64,000 nt of DNA from Oikopleura dioica (lineage: Eukaryota > Animalia > Chordata). The stretch spans positions 1,364,001-1,428,000 of the forward strand of contig OU015566.1 in assembly GCA_907165135.1 (NCBI GenBank), read 5' to 3'. The notes beneath the pieces were generated by a model, which did not search any database, was not told where the DNA came from, and worked only from the letters and a program-made list of their open reading frames with translations. Position 1 is the first letter of the stretch, and each line of letters starts with the position of its first letter. Both the position numbers and the translations under genes were made by a program. Below are positions 430 to 39,179 of this stretch, piece by piece.

Positions 430-1942
430 TTTTAGCCGGAGCTGTTCTTTGGCAAGTTCGAAATTCGATGGATTTAGCCGCCGACGACAGCAATATTTTT
501 TTGGTACATGAATAAAAACAATCAGTTGCGGTACGCAGAAAATGGGGAGCGAGAAAAGGTCCCGAATTTTCTAACAAAAGCGATTTCGATCTGCAAATTG
601 AACATGGCGAAACCGTTTTGGACGGAATGGCATTGGAGTAATGATGAACGGGGTATCTGCCCACCATGTGCGGAAAAACCTTATGACGGTGCAGGAATGG
701 TTTTCGGCGAAATAAGAAAGAATTCAAGAAGAAAAATCGAAAACCTCATTTTCAGGAAATAGAAAAAACATGCTTTATAGATACAAAGTACGGACCTGTT
801 CTCAACCAGGCGCTTGTATAGGCCTTGGTGAGAAAAAACACGAGTGCAATTATATTCCTATGTGCCGTAAGTAATTATAAACAATATTATTACTAATTTC
901 TTGCCTTATTTTCAGCTCAACATAAGCCCTGGGAAGAATGGACTCAATGCAGTCCAAGCAAATTCGAAATTTCACAAAACGCCACTGCTCCTGCTACTTG
1001 GACGAGAACGAGAGTCAGACCGTGCAAAAAATGTAAGTTATTTTTTTTGAGAGAATTTTCCATGCTCAAATTGAACCATAGATTGCGACAATGGAAGACG
1101 ACAATTTGGAAAACTCCCAATTTACGAATTTGAACATCCAAATATCACGAAATTGACAGATATTGAAAACTGCACCGCAGGTTTGAAAAAAACTTTGACA
1201 AAAATATGGAGCAAAATTATGAAAAAAAAACAGGTTTTTCGGTCAAACAGACTGCAAGTTCAAACGAACATCGTGTTTTTTTATTGAAATGAGTAAGTAA
1301 CACGACAGATTAGCGTTACTGAATTATAAATTTGTTGCGAACTATCCGCTTAATATAATATGAATCTTCGAATGAAGTTCCATTCCCTCTCGATTGGAAA
1401 AAAGGCCGATGAAAAGAGCTTACACTCTGAATATCGAGGACAAGTTCACCGTAAGTTTATCGTTTTTTTTTAATTTTTTTTTAAATTTTTCTAGTACAAT
1501 GAAGAGCTAGAATTGGAGCGACTTTTCAATCAATACGAAGATTTTGGGAAACAAGAGATTCCGAGAATTGAATTGAGGGGAGAAAAAGAACACGATGCAA
1601 AAAGTGAAAATGGATTAAAACTGCTTATTATTTATAATCATTTGGGCAAGTTCCATCCATTCAAGAGCGGATATTTACTTAGTTGTCGGACTCGTTTTTG
1701 TGCTAATATTATTGCTTTTCATCATGATGATCTTGACGAATGCAGTAGTGGAATTGTTAGTTTTTCATCAAAAATACTGCATTATTCAACATATTCAGCT
1801 ACAAAGGACTTCAATCGACCAAAAACAAGGAGGAAAACCAGCGACTTTTAAAATCACCAACTATCTCTCTTCGAGAAATGTAAATAAAGACTTATATGAT
1901 GAATTAAAATTTATTGAGCAAAAAAAAAAAAAATTCAAATAA
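430..1942 (+). CDS. Multi-exon, probably single-pass membrane protein with thrombospondin type-1-like repeats (start approximate)
   Basis: Exons encode FWTEWHWS..CPPC, RYKVRTCSQPGACIG..HEC and PWEEWTQCS...TRTRVRPC (TSP1 pattern). Short gt-ag introns. Hydrophobic IYLVVGLVFVLILLLFIMMIL near the 3' end; stop at 1940-1942. Confidence 0.5.
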
Positions 1943-2349
1943 TTTCCAAAAACACTTATTCAGAAAAAATGCATGCAAAGCTCTTTTGTGTGAGGGGTCA
2001 TCTGCCATGCTGATTCATTGTTTCTATCACCCCCTTTCATCCAATATATTTGCGCGTCTGAACACAATTCCCTCTTTTTTTTCTGCCTTTTCAACAGTCT
2101 CAAAGGTCACAGAGATTTGCTCCTCGTCAAAAGTTTGTGAATATAATTTGAGTCGGCGCCGTTTGTGATTGTCGGGGAAATTATCAAGTTTCAAAATTTG
2201 TAAAGAGAGAAGAGGAAAATGGGGTTTTTGAACAAACTGTTGAGAAAAAAGACGCAAGAGGAAAAAGACGCGCTCAAGGTAAGATACAGTCTCCCAAGCA
2301 GGGCTGGATATTTTGAAATCAGCAAAAATTTCAAATCAATTTTTGTGTG

Positions 2350-2730
2350 AAATCTCATTTCTATCTCAAAATTTTGCACCATCTCAACAAATCTCAAATT
2401 TCAATATTATTGCAACTCCCTCGTCATAATTTTTCCATTCTTGAGATTGCTGAGATCTCGAGATCTCAAATCTCAAAATTTTGCAAACAGCGCAAGGGCC
2501 GCGGACAAACGTCGCGGGCTTAGAGCAAGACTTGTGATTGGTTCAGATGGACCTGAAATGCTTGAGATCTCAGAATTTCAAATTTCATTTCATTGCAACG
2601 CGCGTATCCAACTCGCGCCTTTTTTTGAGATAATTGAGATCTCAGCATTTCAAATATCATAATATTGCAAAATCGAAAATTGAGATCTCAGACAGAAAAT
2701 TTTCTGAGATTGCATTTTTGAAATGGATGA
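2350..2730. repeat. Degenerate palindromic, MITE-like repeat rich in (tt)gagatctc(ag)
   Basis: Four or more copies of the palindrome gagatctc, with loosely complementary left and right flanks. Confidence 0.35.
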
Positions 2731-2957
2731 GATGATGATTCATGTTTTTTTTCGGGGTTTGAGATTTTTCTTGATTTCAAAATATCCAGCCCTGCTCCCA
2801 AGGGGATTAGCAAGTTTTGATCTTTTTGCCGATTTAAGGACTCCTCTTGAAGATTTGTCTGGTAGACAAAGTGTCTAACAGACTTTTGCCTTATTTGTCT
2901 TGAAATTTGATTGACTATTTTTTCTCCGAAAACTTGGTTTTGAAGTTTTAACGAGCC

Positions 2958-3551
2958 CATTATTCAAGCCCGCGGAATATCCACCGATCGGAACAAACTG
3001 GAGCAACTGGAAAATCTGGGTTGAAACGAGCGACGAAAATGCTGTTGAAATGACACCGGATTTCTACACTCGCCTTGGCCGCTCTGGAATCAAAATCGAC
3101 GACGAAAAGTATTACACAGTCGACGAAATTCTCAACCTTCGATTTGGTAATCAAGCGATGAGTGTTCAGCGGGAAAAGAAAGCGTTTGCGATTGCGGCTC
3201 TTTTTTCGATTGGTATGTTTTTTTCTCCCTTTTCCAAAGAATAATCGACGAAATCGTAGTCGTTGCTGACAAAACACACGAAATTCTTCACATCGGAAAA
3301 GATCAACGAAACAGGTTCTGGCATCCAAGAGACAAAAAAGCGCGAAGAGTCCAGTGGATCAAGTCGAACGGCGAGGAATTCGACCTTCAAGAGGCGCTCT
3401 GTAATTTTTTCGCCGAGCAAAATAACAATCTGGGTAAGCTTTTTCCTCGAATTACTCAATTTTCATCAATTTAGGAGCGGAAGATGCAAAACTCTTCTCG
3501 TACGAAGAAAACGAGTTCATTGTGCGAATTCTCGGCGAAACTGTTTATTGA
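2958..3551 (+). CDS. Uncharacterised protein (three exons seen, 5' end unresolved)
   Basis: The frame stays open across introns at ~3213-3240 and ~3435-3475: LFKPAEYPPIGTNWSNWKIWVETSDE...IIDEIVVVADKTHEIL...ILGETVY*. Confidence 0.45.
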
Positions 3552-3588
3552 TACTGAAAATTTTGGATGAATAAATTTAGTAGAATTC

Positions 3589-5461
3589 TTATTTATCAAC
3601 AGTCGATTCAAAATAATTCAAATCTGTTTCTCGAGCTTGATTATTTGAAAAAACAGTTTTCTTTCTGAGTTTTTCGTAGACGAATGTTTCTCTTTTTCTC
3701 CAAGGTCGCCAAACTCCGTCGATTGGGAGTGCAGCAGGGTCGGATGCTTCTTGTTGGGGCTTGACTTGCTCGTCCTGAATTTTTAGGAAGCAAAACTTTC
3801 AATAAATCTTACGTAGTAATCAGCTAATTTGAGAAGAAACTTGTCGACCAACTCTGGATACGAATCCGAAACATCATTCCTTTCTCCTTCGTCCTCCGTG
3901 ATCGCGTAGAGCCTCACCAGTTTATCTTCTTCTACATCTTCGAGCGCAACTTTGTCCGGTTCATATTTCAAATTCTTTTTTTGCGAAAAAGAGCAGCCCC
4001 AGTGACAAGGGCGGCCGGTAATCAGCTTCCAATTTTCTGAACGGATGGCGGCTTTGACGGTCACGTCGAAAGTCCTGTTCGACAGGACTTGAAATTCCCG
4101 GCTGTCGAGTTCGCGCTTTGCCCTTTTGAGCGGATCCATGAAGTTGAGGAGGTGGGAGCGTTTTGGAACGGGTCGTAAATGGAAGAGATCTTGAGCAACG
4201 CCATCGAGAGGCAGCGTTTCAGGAGGAACTTCGCAGCCAGCAGATCGAAGGAGAGTCGGAAGCCAATCGGTCACGTGCATGACGTAAGGAAAGGACTTTC
4301 CCTTGAGACTTTCTGGCAGCTTGGGCGAGTGAACAAAAGCTCGACTTCTGATTCCCCCTTCGAAGATATTCCCCTTTTTTCCTCTCAAGGGCCAGTTTGA
4401 AGCTCCTTCTCTTGTTTGACCGCCATTGTCAGAAGTGATGATCAAAAGTGTATCTTTCCAAAATCCCTTTTCCTTCAGCGCTTTCACGATTTCCCCGATA
4501 AAGTGATCTACGACGGCGATTTTTCTAGAGAGCATTTTTCGATAATGCGTCCAAGGTGTTTCCTTGAAAAGGGTCGAGAACTCGGGAAGCCATTGCAGCG
4601 GACCGTGAACTTCTTGGAAAGAAAGAAATTCAAAAAGGGGTGTTTCAGGATCGAAATCATCGAGTTTTGCGATGAAATCATCCGCAATCGCCTTTGTCGA
4701 ATAAGTGCCGTTCAGATCGAATCTTATTTTCTCGGTTCCATTACTGTAAACTTCCCTAAAATCAAAACCAGCTGGTCTGTATATTTTTTTCTCCATAAGT
4801 TCCATCTTCTTTGGCGGTCCTTCAATTTCGCCTCTGTAACACGGGGAGTAGAGATAGCAGTTGTTTCCCGAGTCGTGATAAAAATAATCCTGTGAGCCGA
4901 GATAGAAGCCGAAGAATCTGTCGAAACCTCGATTTTGCGGGCAATGATATTTGGTATAAAATCCAAGATGCCATTTGCCATGCATTGAGGTTTGATAGCC
5001 ACACTGTTTGAATGCTTCAGGAAGGAGAGTCTCGGACAAGGGAATTGCTTCTGGTTCATCGGGCTTTATCACTCCTTGGGAAATATCATTTTTGGTTGAA
5101 TTTGGCTTCGGACCTGATTGAAGACCATATCGAATATTGTACCGGCCTGTCATTAGAGCTGCTCGAGAGGGAGTACAGGAAGGTTGATTGTAATACTTGT
5201 CGATATGCAGTGCATTTTTCGCGAGGTAATCAATATTGGGACTTTTGACATCGGGGTTGACATAGCCTTTGTTCGCATTTTGCAAACCTGTCATCGTGAA
5301 TTACCGATGCTCAAAAATAACATCCTTCAATACTGTCCTAAATCATCAAAGCCCAAATCATCGATGAGAATAAAAATAACATGTGGCTTTTTCGCGAAAC
5401 TTCCGTGTCCAAAACATTCTCTAAGAAACAAAAATATCAGAAAAGGCAGAAGTTTTCGCAT
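3589..5461 (-). CDS. ARSB-like: Arylsulfatase B-like secreted sulfatase
   Basis: Signal peptide MRKLLPFLIFLFLRECFG; KPHVIFILIDDLGFDDLGY; formylglycine motif CTPSRAALMTGRY; GKWHLG; SDNGG; NWPLRGKKGNIFEGGIR; C-terminal DP...GVWRPW. Confidence 0.93.
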
Positions 5462-30327: not shown

Positions 30328-33300
30328 CTAAACAAGGTGCAGCAAACTTAGAATTACAACCAAAATTGTAGCAATGAAGATTTTGTATTGAGAGCACGCT
30401 GTATCAGGCCAGATTTGCTTCTCGACAGGAGTTACTTTCGCATTCCATTGGCCGAAAATATCCCAGAGCATGTAGCAATTGATGATTTTTCGATTGACGC
30501 ATCGCTCAAAAGTCGAAAAACTTCAAGAAAAAATTAATATTTTCGATCAGAAAATCAGGAATCTTACCGACAAGGACTGTCACTCGGCTCATCCCTTCCA
30601 TCATCTGCTTCAACTAGGCAGTTATCAAACGTAAAAATGATTTCGGCAACTGGGCAGAAATCTTTGCCAGCCCGAAGCGCGTCTTTTGTACAAATCATTT
30701 CATCGAGTTCGAATCGCAAGTCATTCTTTTCGTCATTGTTCCAGAAAGTGAAAATTTCAGGGGTATCCTCGCAGTGCCCTGCGCGTATTTGAACGCATCC
30801 TTAATTTTTTGTCTCTGTAGAATGAGGGGGTTAAACTTACTGTCAAAGGAAGAATATCTACAGGAGCTTTCTGGATTGTCTGTCAGGGCACAGGTTTTAA
30901 TTGCGTCCTGAATATCAGATTTTGAGGATTTTTCACAAGATGAAAATGTCCTTTTATGACTTATTTTTAAAAAACTTACCGTAATAGAGCCAATCTCGCA
31001 ATTGACCCTTTCTTCGATCAATTCCTCGAGCTCCGGATTCAGTCCAGTTTCTTTCTTTTCCGGAATTCCTTCCCGCAACTTCACTTTTTTGATCGGCCGC
31101 CTGCTGATTTTAATCGGCGCTTTTGTCGTTTCCTCTTTCGGCTCCGTCGTCGTTGTTGTTTCATCTGTAGTGGAGGCTGTTGTCGTTGTCGTTGTCGATT
31201 TTGTCGTGATTCGATATTGTTTTGCTGGGGGAACATAAACTGTTGTCGTTTTTGTTGTCGGCTTCGTCGTCGCTGCTGGGGTTGCTTGATTGTTTCGAGG
31301 AAGACCCATCGATTCAGGAACGGTGAACGGGTTGGGAGGGATGTAAGGAGTGGCTTTTGTGGTTGTTATTCTGAAGATTTCCTTTGGATCAACGCCGGCT
31401 TTGATTTTTTCGATTTCGCGCTCGAGCTGCTCGAATGTGATTTCTTCGTCTTTTTGACCGGGAGAGATGTTGGAATAAGGACGCGACGGTAAACTCGGCT
31501 TGCCTGTATTTTCTGAAAAGTGAAAGATAGCTTATGTAGTTGACAGATAAAACGTACCTGGGAGAATATTTTTCTCTCGCATTTGATTGGATAATCCCGG
31601 CAAAGGATTGTAGTAGTAATCGGAAATGTCGAAATCGTAGTTTTGAAAGTCGTAGTCCAGTCCAGGAAGACTATCATAATCATCATAGTCGTCTAACCCC
31701 AAGTAGTCGTTCACAATGTCAGCTGGTAATCCTGCGTCATCGGAAGCGCCTGCCGCTGGCTGGGATGCTCCGTTATTGCATCTTACCCAGCCGATTTGGG
31801 GGTCGTAGCACATTCCGCCGGACATGACATCGTTGATTCCGACTTCGCTTTCCGCTAGAGAGCAAAATGTGATCAAATGATTGATATGAAAATTAGAAAA
31901 CCTTTTGTTGAAATCGTAGAAGCTGTCGTTGTTGTCGTCGTTGTCGTCGTAGTTGTCGTGATACAGGGCGGCGGAGGATTCATCTCTAAGTACAGTTGAG
32001 CCGCCAGTGCTCCTTGATAACCAGCATTGTAGTCCAGCGCCACTTCTGATTGTTTATAATTCGAGCGCTCATTGTAGTAACGATCGTTAATATCCGGCCC
32101 ACCAACAAGAGCGCCAAGGAGAACGTGCGGATTCGGATCAGGGCTCGTTTCTGCTACTTTCGTGCATGCAACTGGCTTGGGAGGACAAGAACTGGCTCGG
32201 TGGTGATATTTTGTCGGCGGATTGCGCCCCCAGCCGACGATGTAGGAGCGAACGTCTTTTCCGAGAAAGTAGTCGATTTGCGACTTGGCGAACTCGCGAT
32301 AGCGGCAACTATTGATTCCGAGATCCGCGGCGATTCCACAAACAAATGCGATATTTGCCGCGTAGCGATTTGGTCCCCACTCTGCCAGGAAAAGCAAACC
32401 TTTTGGGGTGAAAGCTTTTCCGCTGTCCTTCATAAACTTGTCGCAAAACCGCTTGATTGGAATATCATAATCAGCACTGGCAGTCATGTTCTTGAGCAAA
32501 ACTTGCGCTCCGATCGTCACGTCGTCCCAGAAATAAGCAAACGGATCAGCGGTGGAAAGCGCGAACTCTTCGTACTTTTTCTGCGCCGCTCTGAGATACC
32601 AACTGTCAGAAGTAGCGTAGTAAATCCAAAGCGCCGCCCAAGTTAGTTCGTCGCCGAAGCCAGAGGATTTGTAATACTTTTCAGCGTCTGGAATCGCTCG
32701 GTGGTAATAGTCGCGATATCGATCCGCGAATTCGTACAAGTCCCGAGCGTGTTTCAGGCATTTCGCGGCGAATTGAGGGTCGTCTTCTTGGAGCAAAATG
32801 CTCGCCGAAGCTAGAGCCGCCGCTGTTTGACCAGCTAGATCTGTTCCCGGCCGCTCGTCAGTAATCGCAAATGCTTTTCGCGCCCAAGTGATGTCTTCTG
32901 GTCTTCCCCAGCGCTTGTGGTCGATTTCTCCGATGCCCACTTGTCCGTAGAGCTTGTACTTTTCCGGATGACAGTTGATCAGGTACTCCGCTCCGTGTCG
33001 CAGAGCCTTTTTCAAATTATCCAGCTCTCCCGCCTCTACGTATTGTTCTCTGTACTGGACTCCTCCCCAAGCGAGCGTGGTCATACTGTAAGCCATCGGA
33101 AAATTGAATTTCATGAAATCACCGGCGTCGAAATAACCACCAGTTAAATCTTCGTTGTCATCGCCGAAATCTTGAAGGGCAGCGTCTCCGCGCCAGACGA
33201 TCCGGGAGTCGCCTTTTTTCCCGGAGCGTTGGGCTTCGTAGAAGAGAAGAGAGAGACCTTTCATGGAATAACGAAAACGCTAGCACGAAAATCTCTAGAT

Positions 33301-33601
33301 GCGGCGCATTAGAGCCCTGGCGCACCAATTTCGTGCTTCCAGAACATCAACTTTTTTCTCTAGATCTACCGGCTCGCTTGACAAAAGTTTCATTTCGACA
33401 TCATTCTGCCTCAGCTCCGGCTGGGTAAGAGAAATTCTCCAACAAAGGAGAGGTCCGAGAGCGAGATTTTTACGGTCAGTACTGTAATAACTTATTACTA
33501 ATAAGGATAGGTTACTAGAGATCTATTTCTCACAATATTTTTAGACGAGGGAGAAGAGCTGCGATGTTAGTAACCAGCGGTGGAACTGAGATCACCGTCA
33601 T
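30328..33601 (-). CDS. GH9 endoglucanase A: intact catalytic domain, Thr-rich stalks, two Cys-rich repeats, hydrophobic C-terminal tail (5' end uncertain)
   Basis: LLFYEAQRSG, GGYFDAGDFMKF, YHHRASSCP, SEVALDYNAG (catalytic Glu codon at 32044-32046); poly-Thr; SCRYSSFDRCV and PCRFSTFERCV repeats; ends KIFIATILVVILSLLHLV*. Confidence 0.9.
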
Positions 33602-33789
33602 GGATTACTATGACGAGGACGGAATCACGGACGACAAAAAATTAGTGCCTTCTCATTCACTCACTTTAAGCCGAAAAAGGCTGGTTGAATCTTTACACTG
33701 TTCTGGCCACTTATCAATCCCTCATTTAAAATGGTTCATTTTAATAAAAAAAACACGTTCCGCTGTTTACCAAATGCTTCAAACATTCG

Positions 33790-35344
33790 TCATTCCATTC
33801 CTATCAACTCTCCATAGTCAGGTGCAAAAGTCCCCATCGCAAGCAACTTCTGCCCTACTTTCGAGTCTCCCACTGACAGCGTACTTTTGTCTTCAATCAG
33901 TGTTCCTTCGATTTCTAGCGTTAGCACTCCAGCGGCGAGGGCTGTAAATCCAGCGTTAGTGTTCAGCGTAACCGTCGAATGTTGGTAGTCGCTTCGGTCA
34001 TCGAGAAACTCATCGAGCGGATTCGGACCGGCGACGACAGCGCCGTGCAAAATGTGAGGATTCGGGTCTTCCGAGTCTTTCTGCGCCCAGCCGCATTTTG
34101 CCGGTTTGTAGGGACACGAACTGGCCTTGTGGTACGGCCGCTGGGGGCCTCCGTTCTTCCCGTAGCCGACGACAAAGGATTGCCCGGTGTTTTCTCCGAG
34201 AACGTAGTACAGTTGCTTTTTCGCGAGAAGCCGGTATACATTCGGCCGGATGTTATTTTCCGCTGCGATGAGGCACAAAAAGCAGGAAGACGTCGTTGCT
34301 TCAAGAGTGCCCCATTCTGTCAGGAAAAGAAGCCCCGCCGGTGTGTAATCCGCCCCGCCACCGGGCAACAATTTATCGCAAAATCGAATGGTTGGGCCCC
34401 AATGCGGCTCAGCTTTCGTCAAACTTGCCAGCATCGTGTGAACAGCGATTCGTTTATCATCCCAGTTGTAATACTCCATCGGCTGGCGCTTGTTGAATTT
34501 TTTCATATGAGCAGTCGCTTTTTTGATCCAAATTGGCCGGGCCTCTCGATTTTGAACGGCCTTGGCGATCCAGAGCGCTGCCCAAGCGAGTTCGTCGTGA
34601 AAGCCGTTGTATGATTTGTAGCGATTGGCGGCGTCGAGGATCGATTCGTGATAACTGCCTTGGTACTGATTGGCGAATTTGTAGAGCTGCATTGCTTTTT
34701 CCATGCATCGGCGTTGGAATTTCTCGTCGAATCCGCGAAAAACCATGGATGTTGCGGCCAAGGCAGCGGCTGTTTCGGCGATGAGATCAGAGCAGGGACG
34801 CTTGTTCGTGCATTTGAACGAAATTTCGTCGAAAGCTTCGAGCATATCTTCCGGTCGCCCCCAGTACTCATTCGTGTCTTTTGTCTGGCCGACTTGGCCG
34901 TAGAACTCGAAGGGGTTAGTGTGGCATTTGATGAAGTAGTCTGCCGCCCATTTAAGGGCGTCCATAGCTACTCGATACTCGTTCGCCTGGACGTACGCTT
35001 CTTTAAACTCAACCACACTCCAGGCAAGAAGAGTCATCGCGCTGGCCATCGGGAATCCGAACTTGACAAAATCGTGGTCGACGAAATATCCACCGACGAG
35101 ATTTACTTTGTGATATCCTCCGTCCGTCAAGCCGGAATCTTGGCGCCAGTCGATTCGTTTTGGATGCATGCTGAGTTCTCCGCTTCGCTGGGCTTCGAAA
35201 AAAAGAAAGGAGAGGTGGATAGCATGGGCGACATCGTGGACGTATGGAGGGGTGGTGGTCGTGATGACGGAAAAGGCAGTAGGGTTTGGTGGTGGAGGAG
35301 TGTTGACAGCGACGTTTGCGCCGTTGAAGACAGGGTTTACTCGG
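33790..35344 (-). CDS. GH9 domain B with substituted catalytic residues; begins at a splice acceptor, no local start exon
   Basis: LFFEAQRSG...GGYFVDHDFVKF (DAGD replaced), PYHKASSCP, HSTVTLNTNAG (Glu replaced by Thr); acceptor ttctag|c at 35344. Confidence 0.88.
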
Positions 35345-35768
35345 CTAGAAATCCATTGTTACTAATTTCTTCTTGAAAAATATTTTTTTATTTTTGAAAA
35401 ATTTTTTTCTTTTTGAACAAAATTTTTTTTCTATTTTTTTCTTTTTTATTTTCCAAAAAAAGAAAAAAATATATAAATTATCCCTGAAGTGTCAAAATTT
35501 TCGCCTCCAAGAATCACCCTTCACTTCCTCTCCCCCTTTTGTTTCCTGAAATAATAAACTGTCATAAAATAAGCGCAAGCAATTCAACCGCGAAAACAAG
35601 AGGCCTTCATTCTATTCCAAAACGTTTAAAATTTCAACTGCAATTTTACAGTCTGCGAGAATCGATGTAACAATCGTACGAGTTAGTTTACACGCGTGTC
35701 AATATTGAAGTTTCTCGTTTTTAAGCCGACTGCGCTGGTCCCAGTCAGCAGAGATCTTCAAATCAGAC

Positions 35769-37967
35769 ATGAGCGACTTTTTCTGGAGCGATTCTATTTG
35801 GCTTCCGCCGGGAATAAAATGGACCGACTTAGAGAAATTTCAAAATGATGGAGGAAAAATCCCAGTTTTTGAAGATCTGTATATCATTTTTCCACTGTCG
35901 ATAGCGATTCTTGTGCTAAGAAAGACCTTAGAGAAGATTGTTTTTAAACCAATTGGTCACGGATAAAAGATTTTTTTAAGAGAAAAAAATTAACATTTAG
36001 GTCTTCGAGTTTGATGAGCTTTTAGGGTCAGCACTGACCGCCGATTTCCTAGGTCAATTTGGCCGGTCATTTCGAAATAGGCGAAATCCATGGTCCGTTT
36101 GTTCGGTCGGGTCAGCTTTTGGTCGACCAATCAGACCCGATCAGGTCAATTTTTTGGTCAGTGCCGACCCTAGGTGAACTTTGAGTTTCACCAAAAAATT
36201 TTTAAAAATTCTTATCAATAATTTTAAAAAATATATTTTAATTTTTAAAATCATTGATAAGAATTTTTAAAATTTTTTGGAGAAAACATGAATAATATTT
36301 TTCAACTGGGAAGAATTTCTTATATCATTTTGTTATCCGTTAAAAGCCGCTATTTTGGCCTGAAAGACAGAACCCGCAAAACGAATGTGCCAAACGAAAT
36401 CTTGGAAAAATATTTTCTTTCAAATCAAATCTTTCAAGAAAAAAATTTGAAAGAAGAGGACAAAGGTAAGTTCGCTTTTTATAAGCAATAAATTCACGGA
36501 AACGGGTCTAAATTCCAAGAAAACATTTCCCGATCAAATATTGAAATAAGCCCTCGCTAAGTTAATATCTTTAAGCGGTCAAAAGCGGTAAAAACTTTCA
36601 AATGGGCTTATAATTTTATGGCGCCATTTTTCTTAGATTTTTAAGCGCGAATTCTTGAAAAACTTGGAGAATCATGGGACGAGGGGAAAATCGAAAGATG
36701 GTTTCGAAATCAGCGAAGACTAACAATCAAGCCGAAAATTGGGAAATTTGGGGAAACCATGTGGAGAGCCGTTTACTACATTTTTGCTTTCAGGGATGTT
36801 CAGAAATTTTTTTTATGCTTGCATCTAAGGCCCTCGAACTAAAAATTGATTGAAAATCGACAATTTAGGAATTTCGCATGTAATTTATCAACAGTTTAAG
36901 AGTCCTTGCCTCCATTCTAGTGGAAAATTCTTGTGAGGGAATTTAGTTCTCTTCAAATACGGTATTATTTGAAGTGCTGTATTTGCTCACTCTGAGAGGA
37001 ATGTTTAATCTTTCTTGAATCATTTGAACAACAAAAAGCGCAGCTACGGAACTAGCGTCGTCATCAACAAAAGTTGGTTTTGGAACACGATCGAATGTTG
37101 GGAAAACTACCCGATGCAGGAGCTCACGCCCGATGTCCAGAAATACTATTTTCTTGGCTGTGGGCATGCTCTGTCGCTTTGTCTGACCTTGCTGACGGAT
37201 AATGTGAGGAAGGACTTCAAAGCGAAAATTGTTCACCACGCGGCTACGCTTAGTTTGTTGGTGTTTTCTTATGTTTGTGGGTATACAAGAGTCGGAGCGC
37301 TCGGTAAGCATTTCTAGAGACGCATATCAAAAACCGTAAATTTTATTACTCTTGTTCATGTTTTATCTTAAAATTTTGTCTAAGTTCGAATAGAAAATAC
37401 TACCATAAAAAATCTTAGCAGCGAATGAAAAAGTTGTGACTAACAAATGTATTTGGTCCTTGATGAAATTTTAACGACGAGAGTCTCTTGTAGGAAAGAA
37501 TGACAGCCAATTTTTTAGTTATGTGGCTCCATGATGGTTCTGATTTCTACCTCGAAATCGCAAAATCTCTCGTTTATCTCAAGAAACAGTTCCTTGCGGA
37601 TATTTTCTTCACAATTTTCGCCCTCGCCTTTTTCATCAGGTAAAAACCCCCTACTTCCCCATCTTTATCATTTCTCTCAGCCGAATCGTGTACTTTCCCT
37701 TTGTCGTGATTCACACAACTTTGGTCAAACCCATCGGTCTTTTTGGCCTCTTTCCTGGGTACTTTATTTTCAACGCTTTGTTGGGTACTCTTTTATGTCT
37801 CCACCTTTACTGGTTTTATTTAATTTGCGACCTTGCTTGGAAACTGATCAAGGGAGACCAAATTGCGGATAACAGGTACTACCAACAATTTTACCAAGCT
37901 CCCTGACCCGTTCAGATCCGACAATGAAGAATCTTCATCAGAAGACGAAGCAAAAAAGACCAAATAA
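35769..37967 (+). CDS. CERS: Ceramide synthase (Hox-like plus TLC/Lag1 domains)
   Basis: FFWSDSIWLPPGIKWTDL, IERWFRNQRR, KFGETMWR, RKDFKAKIVHHAAT, LHDGSDFYLEIAK, DQIAD; acidic tail SDNEESSSEDE. Confidence 0.93.
36022..36173. mobile_element. 152-bp MITE in CerS intron 1
   Basis: 17-bp TIR tagggtcagcactgacc / ggtcagtgccgacccta; degenerate 8-bp flanks atgagctt / gtgaactt. Confidence 0.8.
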
Positions 37968-38175
37968 ATGACCAAAAACTCGACCAATCTTCCCGAATGA
38001 TTCATATAAAAACATATGATGATGTATTTATAATTATTTCACTGTCAATCTTTAGATTAAATCTTAGGCATCAATTCATAATAAAATATTATGCAACAAA
38101 ACAAAACGAAAAGAAAGATTTTTGAAGAGCAAAAACGTTGAAGCCAAAAATTCCGTCAATCAAAAACAGTCTTAC

Positions 38176-38787
38176 GTATCAGCAGGATCTGGCAAAATTC
38201 TTAACCCGATTTTTCGACCTCTTAATTCTTTGTTTTCTTACCTTGATGGTGTTGTATCGAGAGTGTTGCCAGTTCCGTCTCTTTCCAATGTTGTTCCGAC
38301 TCTTTTCAGCGCCTCTTCTATCGTCTCAAAAGTGTTGATCAGCTCAATCAACAGAAGATCCGAGTTTGGCGGCCCGTTGGAACCATCAGGCTGCGTTCCG
38401 GTGAAAAACATTGACACTTCGCCTTGATGAGTTTGAAGTCGACCATTGTAGTTTTGATTTTTGAGGAGATAGACTTGTCCATCCGCGCTGACTTCGGCCA
38501 CTTGAGCGTCGAAAATCTCAATCGAAGTGACAGGAGAAGTGAAAGTCAATTTCATCAGCCATCCGAATCTGATTTCTCTTTTGATGCCTAAAAATTGGTC
38601 AGCTTGGCCTTTGCCGGTTAAAATTACCGATGGTAATTTTCGCAGAAAATCCTCCGGGCCAAAACTGCGAAATATCATAACTAGTCGGATTTGTCAATTC
38701 TGCCTGAGCGTCTGTTTCTCTTATCAGCCCAAAGCTCAGCGCCAAAAAAGCGACTTTAGGGAAATTTGAAAATTTCATTTCTTCCTT
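38176..38787 (-). CDS. Signal peptide plus CBM2-like cellulose-binding module; probably the 5' exons of GH9 gene B
   Basis: MKFSNFPKVAFLALSFGLIRETDA/QAEL..YDISQFWPGGFSAKITIGIKREIRFGWLMKLTFTSPVTSIEIFDAQV..DGQVYLLKNQNYNGRL (CBM2 W-GGF, GW and N--YNG pattern); a mini-exon ILPDPADT ends in ac|gtaag. Confidence 0.75.
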
Positions 38788-39179
38788 TTCTTTTCCATCA
38801 CTCTTTTTGAAAGAAGGCAAAACAGGTAAATGCGGAATTTGTTACTGACTATTTGAAGAATGAATGTCAAAAGTAGATTTGGCGCATGTTCCTTGCCCGC
38901 GGCGCTTTACAACTAATTCCGGGCAACGAATCACCCGCCGCGCCAGTCATCCCCTGCCGAGACGAGTGTTATCAGTGCTCCGTCAAGGGACGTAAACTCG
39001 CTTGAAAACTCATTATCTTTAATTTTAAATTGAAAAAAAAATAAAGAATAAATTATTATTTTAGTAAAATTTTAAATATTATCAAAAAAATAATTTAAAT
39101 TTTTATTTAAAAAAAAATTATAATTGAAATGATAATTTCAAAAAAAATTTTTTTATCGAATTATTTTTTTTAATCGTGA

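What the first reader, a model, noticed from the sequence alone, without database searches (positions are those of the whole stretch)
33790..35344. GH9 pseudo-enzyme beside an active paralogue
Compared with its neighbour, the DAGD motif reads VDHD (35080), HHR reads YHK, and the catalytic-acid motif SEVALDYNA reads STVTLNTNA (Thr codon at 33973-33975). The ORF is otherwise long and intact, suggesting selection for a non-catalytic cellulose-binding, scaffolding or regulatory role.
Basis: partly seen in the sequence, partly recalled or inferred. Interest (0 to 1): 0.75.

Follow-up and report, generated by a model that had tools for sequence, protein, structure and literature searches.

The report
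Dead cellulase domain fused to live one
The "pseudo-cellulase" is real and strongly conserved, but it is almost certainly not a separate gene: it is the first of two GH9 cellulase domains in one secreted Oikopleura protein (cellulose-binding module, dead GH9, live GH9, mucin-like stalk).

Summary
The minus-strand ORF 33790-35344 is a full GH9 domain with VDHD for DAGD, YHK for HHR, and Thr (33973-33975) for the catalytic-acid Glu. It also has TN for the conserved Asp-His pair and NT for the Asp-Tyr of DYNAG.

The domain is not decaying. The fold is predicted intact, and orthologues in at least six larvacean lineages keep the dead motifs. Synonymous sites are saturated while pN is about 0.05 (omega about 0.02 between two close lineages). 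It is as constrained as the active domain.

The reading "pseudo-enzyme beside a paralogue" needs correcting:
- A metatranscriptome contig splices this exon (acceptor at 35344) to upstream signal-peptide and CBM2 exons.
- The ORF runs in frame through a 16-residue linker into the first 13 residues of the "neighbour" GH9.
- In relatives the two domains share one ORF, one exon, or a phase-matched GT-AG intron.
- In this window a 543-nt insertion with inverted-repeat ends (33258-33800) supplies the apparent stop codon. It must be removed as a GA-AG intron, and that splice is not shown.

The likely role is a non-hydrolytic glucan-binding or positioning domain next to the active cutter.

The scan earlier noted another catalytically impaired GH9 head elsewhere in this genome. 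The Bergen orthologue is listed as GH9-1 in a 2026 preprint, with no comment on catalytic residues.

The parts
38628..38778 (-). Exon 1. ATG at 38778-38776, a signal-peptide-like N-terminus (MKFSNFPKVAFLALSFGLIRETDA/QAEL) and the start of CBM2 (FWPGGFSAKITI). It ends with the first base of a split Gly codon.
   Evidence: Sequence. tblastn matches to the upstream exons of relatives L003-L006, L001 and L014. The signal peptide is judged by eye only.
38588..38627 (-). Intron 1, 40 nt, GT..AG (inferred).
   Evidence: Removing it joins ...AKITI-G-IKREIRFGWLMKLTF in frame. In L001 the same CBM2 is one continuous ORF.
38242..38587 (-). Exon 2. The rest of the CBM2 module plus a linker.
   Evidence: Pfam CBM_2 E=0.018, 15.8 bits, below the cut-off for this exon alone. 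The L001 orthologue is 80% identical and scores 29.6 bits, above the cut-off of 24. An X1 RNA contig covers 38242-38354 and joins it to 35344.
35345..38241 (-). Intron 2, 2897 nt, GT..AG. It contains a plus-strand ceramide synthase gene.
   Evidence: Metatranscriptome contig junction 35344->38242 with ends CT..AC on the plus strand. In species X the CBM2 exons lie about 0.8 kb upstream of the GH9 exons, with no ceramide synthase match.
33801..35344 (-). Exon 3. A Pro/Thr linker, the catalytically dead GH9 domain, a 16-residue inter-domain linker (STLSVGDSKVGQKLLA) and the first 13 residues (MGTFAPDYGELIG) of the second GH9 domain.
   Evidence: PF00759 at 376.8 bits. AlphaFold2 pLDDT 93.8; Foldseek TM 0.92/0.97 to 3wc3 and 1ks8. 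Junction homology to L003, L010, L014 and L012.
35071..35082 (-). VDHD in place of DAGD. The supporting Asp54 is lost; the putative base Asp57 is kept here but is Gly in species X.
   Evidence: Roles of the two Asp as stated in PMC6032398.
34870..34875 (-). Thr-Asn in place of the family-invariant Asp123-His124.
   Evidence: D is 100% and H 98% conserved in 118 animal GH9 proteins. N124 is shared by every member of the dead clade, including P0301 domain 1.
34126..34134 (-). YHK in place of HHR.
   Evidence: The same YHK is found in several dead ascidian GH9 domains.
33958..33975 (-). TVTLNT in place of EVATDY. The catalytic-acid Glu412 is Thr (33973-33975), Asp416 is Asn and Tyr417 is Thr.
33258..33800 (-). 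A 543-nt insertion, a candidate GA..AG intron. It has 13-nt terminal inverted repeats (33786-33798 and 33263-33275) and flanking GATAGG/GAAAGG.
   Evidence: Inverted repeat I2. Absent at this site in L003, L010, L014 and L011. A GC-starting intron lies at the same site in Atlantic-type O. dioica L012/L013. Exact removal restores GELIG-LSLLFYEAQ. The splice itself was NOT observed: an X1 contig runs unbroken across 33738-33963.
31902..33257 (-). Exon 4. The catalytically intact GH9 domain (DAGD, DH, HHR and Glu all present) and the start of a Thr-rich stalk.
   Evidence: PF00759 at 450.6 bits. Residue table. 65% identical to L003 8966-11305.
31558..31854 (-). Exon 5 (acidic, Tyr-rich stalk segment), reached across an inferred 47-nt GT..AG intron at 31855-31901.
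   Evidence: Sequence and frame. tblastn to L003_A residues 474-732. No RNA evidence.
30695..31512 (-). Exon 6 (Thr-rich, mucin-like and Cys-containing tail), reached across an inferred 45-nt GT..AG intron at 31513-31557. It ends at TGA 30695-30697; a further exon is not excluded.
   Evidence: No Pfam match. No RNA evidence.

Best explanation
Window 33801-35344 (minus strand) is the third exon of a gene of about six exons that encodes a secreted protein of about 1,500 residues. The domain order is signal peptide, CBM2, GH9 domain 1 (dead), a 16-residue linker, GH9 domain 2 (active), and a Thr-rich stalk and tail.

Shown:
- Domain 1 keeps the (alpha/alpha)6 GH9 fold but has lost the catalytic acid (E412T), the supporting Asp (D54V), and the neighbouring D123/H124, R137 and D416/Y417.
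- These losses, or equivalents, are fixed in every orthologue found.
- The domain evolves under purifying selection as strong as that on the active domain.

Inferred:
- Domain 1 cannot hydrolyse cellulose.
- It works as a non-hydrolytic glucan-binding or positioning module. Together with CBM2 it would hold or orient a cellulose chain or microfibril for the adjacent active GH9 while the cellulose scaffold of the larvacean house is trimmed or organised.
- In this lineage the two domains are separated by a 543-nt insertion with inverted-repeat ends, which must be removed as a GA-AG intron.
For: Dead residues. Residue roles are from PMC6032398 and established knowledge of NtEgl D54/D57/E412 and T. 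fusca Cel9A D55/D58/E424.

Fold intact: AlphaFold2 pLDDT 93.8; Foldseek TM 0.92/0.97 and rmsd 1.4-1.5 A to 3wc3 and 1ks8.

Selection (NG86):
- Window versus Atlantic-type O. dioica L012: pN 0.050, pS 0.766 over 511 codons.
- L012 versus L008: dN 0.016, dS 0.80, omega 0.02.
- Window versus species X: pN 0.238 for the dead domain and 0.245 for the active one.
- Within species X: pN 0.051 for the dead domain (L003 versus L001) and 0.075 for the active one (L003 versus L010).

One gene:
- An RNA contig joins the CBM2 exon to 35344.
- The window ORF reads ...EDK-STLSVGDSKVGQKLLA-MGTFAPDYGELIG in frame, and L003's active GH9 starts MGTFAPDYGELIGASLLFYEAQ.
- L003 has a GT..AG intron that is phase 0 at both ends and gives a linker of the same length.
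- Between L010 and L003, the 16 codons upstream of the supposed ATG differ by 6 synonymous and 0 non-synonymous changes and begin right after an AG.
- P0377/L014 has one genomic ORF across the junction.
- P0301/L011 has one 1033-residue ORF: CBM2-like, dead GH9, active GH9.
- In the tree, P0301 domain 1 groups with the dead clade (100/96) and domain 2 with the active clade (95/95).
- The second domain has no signal peptide of its own.

The GA-AG intron class is frequent in O. dioica (PMC7072748).
Against: - No read or contig shows the 33801|33257 splice. The only RNA contig there runs unbroken from 33963 to 33738, which could be unspliced RNA, a 3' UTR or DNA carry-over.
- If the intron is not removed in this lineage, the dead domain ends at TGA 33790 as a stand-alone CBM2-GH9* protein.
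- No binding or activity data exist. The binding role is an inference from retained fold and aromatic residues.
- Asp57 and a new Asp55 are present in O. dioica, so residual or altered chemistry cannot be strictly excluded.
- The public gene models could not be inspected. The preprint's GH9-1 sequence is truncated in its supplement.
Confidence: 0.75

Rival explanations
1. Stand-alone pseudoenzyme gene in this lineage. The 543-nt insertion split an ancestral two-domain gene, so the window now makes SP-CBM2-GH9* ending at TGA 33790, plus a separate active GH9 product.
For: An in-frame TGA at 33790-33792, with an ATTAAA-like signal downstream. An X1 RNA contig is continuous over 33738-33963, with no junction reported at 33801. 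There is an ATG at 33264.
Against: - The split would cut the first helix of the second GH9 domain (DYGELIG|LSLLFYEAQ) and leave it without a signal peptide.
- MGTFAPD(Y/F/W)GELIG is conserved in all lineages, and the linker plus this stretch has 4 non-synonymous versus 26 synonymous differences between two O. dioica lineages.
- The post-GELIG tails of the window and L012 are unrelated, as expected for an intron.
- GA-AG introns are common in O. dioica.
Confidence: 0.13
2. The first GH9 domain is still an enzyme with changed chemistry or substrate (for example a transglycosylase, or a different acid/base pair using Asp55 and Asp57).
For: O. dioica keeps Asp57 and gains Asp55 (VDHD). The fold and many conserved aromatic residues are kept.
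Against: - Species X orthologues have VNHG, with no Asp at all in the motif, and Ala at 412. P0301 domain 1 has VNGG and Gly412. Both are under the same constraint, so the conserved function cannot depend on these Asp residues.
- No acidic residue lies near position 412 (STVTLNTNAG).
- D123/H124, R137 and D416/Y417 are also lost.
Confidence: 0.08
3. A decaying pseudogene copy or an annotation artefact.
For: Loss of catalytic residues, taken alone.
Against: An open frame of 514 codons. omega about 0.02 with saturated synonymous sites. A spliced RNA contig. Orthologues in at least six lineages keep the same architecture.
Confidence: 0.01

Closest known systems
Animal GH9 endo-beta-1,4-glucanases (termite NtEgl, PDB 1ks8; earthworm EF-EG2, PDB 3wc3)
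   Same: Same family (PF00759) and the same predicted (alpha/alpha)6 barrel (TM 0.92-0.97, 38-42% identity).
   Different: It lacks the catalytic acid Glu412 and the supporting Asp54, and also D123/H124, R137 and D416/Y417. It sits N-terminal to a second, intact GH9 domain in the same protein.
O. dioica (Bergen) GH9-1, GSOIDG00002601001, listed in SI2 of bioRxiv 10.64898/2026.03.31.715263
   Same: It is the orthologue. The printed N-terminal ~420 residues match the window and L012, including GGYFVDHDFVKF.
   Different: The preprint treats the GH9 genes collectively as cellulases and lists GH9-1 without comment on catalytic residues or a two-domain structure. Its model starts MAAFF and lacks the CBM2 exons. 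The sequence is truncated in the supplement, so its full extent is unknown.
Ascidian tandem GH9-like proteins (Ciona intestinalis LOC100176349, 1078 residues; C. savignyi H2YH71; Clavelina LOC143448311)
   Same: Two GH9 domains in one tunicate protein. The domains lack the base Asp and the acid Glu, and several carry the same YHK motif. A tree that holds the larvacean dead clade together with ascidian domain 1 is not rejected (p-AU 0.58).
   Different: In ascidians both domains are dead (DGxG; E412 to S, R or G). In larvaceans the second domain is intact. Earlier literature noted only that the catalytic base is G in a few sea-squirt isoenzymes, with activity unknown (PMC6032398).
Pseudo-glycosidases: GH18 chitinase-like lectins (YKL-40 and similar) and alpha-Klotho (tandem GH1-like domains each missing a catalytic Glu). 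From general knowledge, not tested here.
   Same: A glycosidase fold is retained, catalytic carboxylates are replaced, and the protein is conserved for a non-hydrolytic role. Klotho is also a tandem.
   Different: A different fold family. Here one of the two tandem domains remains catalytically competent, and the likely ligand is the animal's own cellulose.
Multi-domain bacterial cellulases (for example Caldicellulosiruptor CelA, GH9-CBM3-GH48) and plant KORRIGAN (a GH9 acting in cellulose synthesis). From general knowledge.
   Same: A CBM plus more than one GH module in one polypeptide, and a GH9 acting on cellulose that the same organism produces.
   Different: In those proteins all GH modules are active. 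None pairs a dead GH9 with a live GH9.

Membership tests
GH9 (CAZy family; Pfam PF00759) | Significant match to the family profile over its full length | tested here: met
   376.8 bits, profile positions 3-443 of 444, gathering cut-off 27.7.
GH9 (CAZy family; Pfam PF00759) | (alpha/alpha)6 barrel fold as in solved GH9 structures | tested here: met
   AlphaFold2 pLDDT 93.8, pTM 0.94. Foldseek TM 0.92/0.97 and rmsd 1.4-1.5 A to 3wc3 and 1ks8.
Active GH9 endoglucanase | DAGD motif: catalytic base Asp (NtEgl D57) plus the essential supporting Asp (D54) | tested here: not met
   VDHD in the window and other O. dioica lineages, VNHG in species X, VNGG in P0301 domain 1.
Active GH9 endoglucanase | Catalytic-acid Glu (NtEgl E412) in NEVA(T/x)DYNAG | tested here: not met
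   Thr in O. dioica, Ala in species X, Gly in P0301 domain 1. The column is 97% Glu in 118 animal GH9 proteins.
Active GH9 endoglucanase | Hydrolysis of beta-1,4-glucan | not testable with these tools
   Needs a recombinant protein assay.
Pseudoenzyme (a conserved, catalytically dead homologue) | Purifying selection despite loss of catalytic residues | tested here: met
   omega 0.02 (L012 versus L008). pN 0.05 versus pS 0.77 (window versus L012). The dead domain's pN is no higher than the active domain's.
Pseudoenzyme (a conserved, catalytically dead homologue) | Expressed | tested here: met
   A spliced poly-A metatranscriptome contig joins 38242 to 35344, and other contigs lie along the exon at 93-97% likeness. 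Low cross-lineage read depth in three O. dioica RNA-seq runs. Tissue and expression level are unknown.
CBM2 (Pfam PF00553) | Profile match above the gathering score | tested here: inconclusive
   Window exon 2 alone scores 15.8 bits, below the cut-off of 24. The unsplit orthologue in L001, 80% identical, scores 29.6 bits, above 24. Exons were searched separately; the joined model was not searched.
Two-domain GH9*-GH9 protein (single gene) | Both domains in one reading frame or transcript | tested here: met
   Met in relatives: one ORF in P0301/L011, one exon in P0377/L014, a phase-matched intron with a coding signature in L003/L010. In the window the frame is continuous up to GELIG, but the splice across 33258-33800 was not observed.
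MITE-derived ('introner-like') intron | Terminal inverted repeats and a target-site duplication at the intron ends | tested here: met
   13-nt arms, 12 of 13 complementary, at 33263-33275 and 33786-33798. The flanks GATAGG and GAAAGG are an imperfect direct repeat.
MITE-derived ('introner-like') intron | Further copies of the element in the genome | tested here: not met
   No other blastn match in the 64-kb window or in the loci fetched up to that point, L001-L010. The rest of the genome could not be searched.

The most novel reading that the evidence does not exclude
Tunicates, the only animals that make cellulose, carry an old lineage of catalytically dead GH9 domains: dead-dead tandems in ascidians and a CBM2-dead-live tandem in larvaceans. 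These would act as cellulose "readers" or rulers. In the larvacean protein, the dead cleft would grip a glucan chain at a fixed distance from the live cleft, so that microfibrils of the house scaffold are nicked or trimmed at defined positions rather than degraded.
Probability: 0.25. Interest if true: 0.75.

Novelty: new variant of a known kind. Interest (0 to 1): 0.58.

Why it matters
Larvaceans build and discard cellulose-scaffolded houses several times a day, and a 2026 preprint reports an expanded GH9 family expressed in territories of the house-making epithelium. If one of these "cellulases" is a conserved dead domain hard-wired to a live one and to a CBM2, then part of the expansion is about binding or organising cellulose, not cutting it.

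This gives a concrete pair of domains for testing how an animal controls the length or assembly of its own cellulose. It also corrects gene models that split the protein or miss its CBM2 exons. Finally, it flags the ascidian tandem GH9-like proteins as probable pseudoenzymes.

Tried and rejected
- **RNA-seq runs X5-X7.** These came from a divergent O. dioica lineage (most reads under 90% alike). They gave only low depth on the exon and no usable junctions.
- **dN/dS between the window and species X.** Synonymous sites are saturated (pS 0.79-0.91), so only pN and pN/pS bounds are given. Only L012 versus L008 gave a finite dS.
- **Looking for the public O. dioica protein models.**
  - No O. dioica-named or window-own protein appeared in the length ranges searched, 252-803 and 429-1365 residues.
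  - The 1.84-billion-representative search gave only a 178-residue fragment at 89% identity.
  - This is compatible with a fused model of about 1,500 residues, but it is not evidence for one.
- **Other copies of the 543-nt element.** None was found in the window or in the loci fetched by then.
- **Beetle hit P0002.** At 45% identity it is an ordinary active GH9 and is not relevant.
- **Literature.** Searches for a GH9 pseudoenzyme found nothing, apart from a remark that a few sea-squirt isoenzymes have Gly at the catalytic base.
- **Decaying pseudogene.** Considered and rejected; see the rival explanations.
Full report
**Observation.** Two GH9 ORFs lie head to tail on the minus strand. I call the upstream one B (33790-35169, with the frame open up to 35346) and the downstream one A (31873-33264). 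Both match Pfam PF00759, B at 353-377 bits and A at 451 bits. They are 42% identical to each other.

I compared B with termite NtEgl (PDB 1ks8) and with a profile alignment of 118 animal GH9 proteins. B reads VDHD for DAGD (35082-35071), YHK for HHR (34134-34126) and STVTLNTNAG for NEVATDYNAG.

B also replaces several other family-invariant residues: D123/H124 (to TN), R137 (to E), G148 (to C) and D416/Y417 (to NT). Of 99 columns that are at least 92% conserved, B differs at 23 and A at 18. Only B's differences fall on the catalytic centre; A keeps every one of those residues. In GH9 the C-terminal Asp of DAGD is the base and the N-terminal Asp is an essential helper (PMC6032398). That Glu412 is the acid is established knowledge for NtEgl and for T. 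fusca Cel9A (E424).

**Not a decaying copy.** AlphaFold2, run with a 50-sequence alignment, gives pLDDT 93.8 and pTM 0.94. Foldseek places the model on animal GH9 structures at TM 0.92/0.97 and rmsd 1.4-1.5 A.

Orthologues with the same or equivalent dead motifs turn up in marine metagenomes and Logan assemblies:
- Atlantic-type O. dioica (L012/L013, P0375; 94% amino-acid identity but only about 80% nucleotide identity).
- Two further O. dioica-complex fragments (L008, L009).
- A lineage at 72% identity (P0376).
- A related species complex that I call species X, with several sublineages (L001-L007, L014, P0272, P0275; 63-65% identity). These read VNHG, YHK and SAVGLTNNAG.
- A distant form (P0301/L011) reading VNGG, N124, FHK and G412.

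The Bergen gene GSOIDG00002601001 is listed as GH9-1 in SI2 of bioRxiv 10.64898/2026.03.31.715263. It is the orthologue and also reads VDHD.

Nei-Gojobori counts show strong purifying selection:
- Window versus L012: pN 0.050, pS 0.766 over 511 codons.
- L012 versus L008: dN 0.016, dS 0.80, omega 0.02.
- Window versus species X: pN 0.238 for B and 0.245 for A.
- Within species X: pN 0.051 for B (L003 versus L001) and 0.075 for A (L003 versus L010).
- pS is 0.79-0.91 in these comparisons, so synonymous sites are saturated.

The dead domain is therefore at least as constrained as the live one. Several replacement residues (V54, N124, K361) are themselves fixed across the whole dead clade.

**Upstream: the exon belongs to a CBM2 gene.** There is no ATG between the acceptor at 35346-35345 and codon 35169. 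A contig from a poly-A marine-plankton metatranscriptome (run X1, about 96% identical to the window) joins 35344 directly to 38242. The skipped 2897 nt are bounded by GT..AG on the minus strand.

The upstream exons are 38778-38628 and 38587-38242, separated by an inferred 40-nt GT..AG intron. They encode a signal-peptide-like start and a CBM2. Exon 2 alone scores below the Pfam cut-off, at 15.8 bits. The unsplit species X orthologue is 80% identical and scores 29.6 bits, above the cut-off of 24.

The long intron holds a plus-strand ceramide synthase gene. This agrees with another first-stage note on this window. In species X the CBM2 exons lie about 0.8 kb upstream of the GH9 exons, with no ceramide synthase match.

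**Downstream: B and A are one protein.** B's ORF does not stop after the GH9 domain. It reads ...LEIEGTLIEDK-STLSVGDSKVGQKLLA-MGTFAPDYGELIG-ME*. In species X the 780-residue active GH9 starts MGTFAPDYGELIGASLLFYEAQRSG. So the first 13 residues of domain A, which form part of its first helix, lie in frame at the end of B's ORF.

Five independent lines show that this is not chance:
1. In L003, a GT..AG intron sits directly after ...LEDK and ends directly before VAGAIGNTAVGKELFK-MGTFAP. It is phase 0 at both ends and gives a 16-residue linker, the same length as in the window.
2. Between L003 and L010, those 16 codons upstream of the supposed ATG differ by six synonymous and no non-synonymous changes. 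They begin right at an AG, while the sequence further upstream is unalignable.
3. P0377/L014 is a single genomic ORF reading ...HSAVGLTNNAGF...LEEK-VAGVIRNTQIGKDLFK-MGTFAPDWGELIGFSLLFYEAQR. The L014 contig carries CBM2, B and A in order on one strand.
4. P0301/L011 is one uninterrupted ORF of 1033 residues that runs off the contig end: signal-like start, CBM2-like module, dead GH9, active GH9. In a maximum-likelihood tree its first domain is sister to the B clade (100/96) and its second to the A clade (95/95).
5. In Atlantic-type O. dioica the ORF again runs through the linker and MGTFAPDFGELIG. Linker plus this stretch shows 4 non-synonymous versus 26 synonymous differences from the window.

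Domain A has no signal peptide of its own in any lineage.

**The apparent stop codon.** In the window, GELIG and LSLLFYEAQ are separated by 543 nt (33800-33258). This insertion is absent from L003, L010, L014 and L011. Its ends are 13-nt inverted repeats with 12 of 13 positions complementary, flanked by GATAGG and GAAAGG. The TGA at 33790-33792 lies inside the left arm.

Cutting from G|GA at 33800 to AG|G at 33258 restores GELIG-LSLLFYEAQ exactly. GA-AG introns are unusually frequent in O. dioica (PMC7072748). Atlantic-type O. dioica has an intron at the same site that starts with GC. Its read-through tail is unrelated to the window's, as expected for non-coding sequence.

The splice itself was not seen. 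The only RNA contig there is continuous from 33963 to 33738, and my one read-laying run is used. I put the probability that the intron is removed in this lineage at about 0.8. No second copy of the element was found in the window or in the loci fetched by then, so "MITE-derived" remains a description of its ends, not a family assignment.

**Rest of the gene.** Using the species X protein as a guide, with splice sites read from the sequence:
- Exon 4 is 33257-31902 (active GH9 plus Thr run).
- Exon 5 is 31854-31558.
- Exon 6 is 31512-30695.
- The two introns between them are 47 nt and 45 nt, both GT..AG.

The summed model is about 1,503 residues. No O. dioica protein appeared in searches limited to 252-803 or 429-1365 residues. 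This fits a long public model but does not prove one.

**Mechanism.** Shown: the catalytic acid and helper Asp are lost, the fold is intact, the domain is under strong constraint, it is expressed, and it sits between a CBM2 and a live GH9.

Inferred: the domain does not hydrolyse. Most family-conserved aromatic residues are kept (W32, W74, W98, Y102, W127, Y195, Y206, W217, W221, H360), while H124 and Y417 are lost along with the catalytic residues. I therefore suggest it still accommodates a glucan chain and acts as a second, cleft-type binding module that positions the neighbouring active site. The species X and P0301 orthologues have no Asp at all in the DAGD position, so the conserved function cannot rest on the Asp55 and Asp57 that O. 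dioica retains.

**Comparison with what is known.** The 2026 preprint reports an expanded O. dioica GH9 family with territory-specific expression in the house-making epithelium, and lists GH9-1. It says nothing about catalytic residues or tandem domains.

Ascidian tandem GH9-like proteins (Ciona LOC100176349 and others) have two domains that both lack the base and the acid, and several share YHK. The only mention I found in the literature is that a few sea-squirt isoenzymes have Gly at the base, with activity unknown. The 14 dead domains fall on one side of a branch against the 24 active ones (support 88/93). A tree holding the larvacean dead clade together with ascidian domain 1 is not rejected (p-AU 0.58). 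Long-branch attraction cannot be excluded.

Conceptually the closest analogues are the GH18 chitinase-like lectins and the tandem GH1-like domains of Klotho (general knowledge). An earlier follow-up in this scan (s1-331741) reported another GH9 head with a lost catalytic part in a giant gene elsewhere in this genome. I did not test that report.

**Verdict.** The feature is a conserved pseudo-GH9 domain, but it sits inside a CBM2-GH9*-GH9 protein rather than being a separate gene beside a paralogue. I class it as a new variant of a known kind, of moderate interest.

Noticed in passing
window 35769-37906 (+): A ceramide synthase-like gene lies antisense inside the 2897-nt intron of the GH9 gene. 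It is expressed: X1 contig junctions at 36463->37517 and 37635->37677 (GT..AG) and reads in X5-X7. Species X has no ceramide synthase match in its contigs, and its CBM2 exons lie about 0.8 kb upstream of the GH9 exons.
   Followed up: partly
P0294, P0290, P0289, P0291, P0292 (ascidian proteins of about 900-1090 residues): Ascidian tandem GH9-like proteins have BOTH domains missing the catalytic base and acid (DGxG; E412 to S, R or G; often YHK). They look like double pseudoenzymes. The literature notes only a Gly at the base in a few sea-squirt isoenzymes.
   Followed up: partly
SI2 of bioRxiv 10.64898/2026.03.31.715263 (GH9-16, GSOIDG00017527001): Another O. dioica GH9 reads GGYYDGGGFIKY at the DAGD site, the same DGGG seen in domain 1 of two of the ascidian-type tandems. 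The species probably has more than one dead GH9.
   Followed up: no
window 33801-35344 compared with L012 447-2464 and L014 1647-3863: Intron positions turn over quickly. The dead-domain exon has no introns in the window, has three introns in Atlantic-type O. dioica, and has four or more in L014. L011 has none across the part of the gene it holds.
   Followed up: partly
window 33481-33513: In all three divergent-lineage RNA-seq runs, 8-14 reads match only this 33-nt AT-rich stretch inside the 543-nt insertion, with unrelated sequence on both sides. This is probably a chance match to an abundant transcript, but it is unexplained.
   Followed up: no
window 38775-38798 (-): A short upstream ORF (ATG GAA AAG AAA AGG AAG AAA TGA) has a stop that overlaps the main ATG at 38778-38776. 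The 5' end of the transcript is unknown.
   Followed up: no
L011 (Logan SRR23998775), 1298-4399: A single ORF encodes CBM2-like, dead GH9 and active GH9 modules in an unidentified organism, probably a distant appendicularian (38% and 49% identity to the window's two domains).
   Followed up: partly
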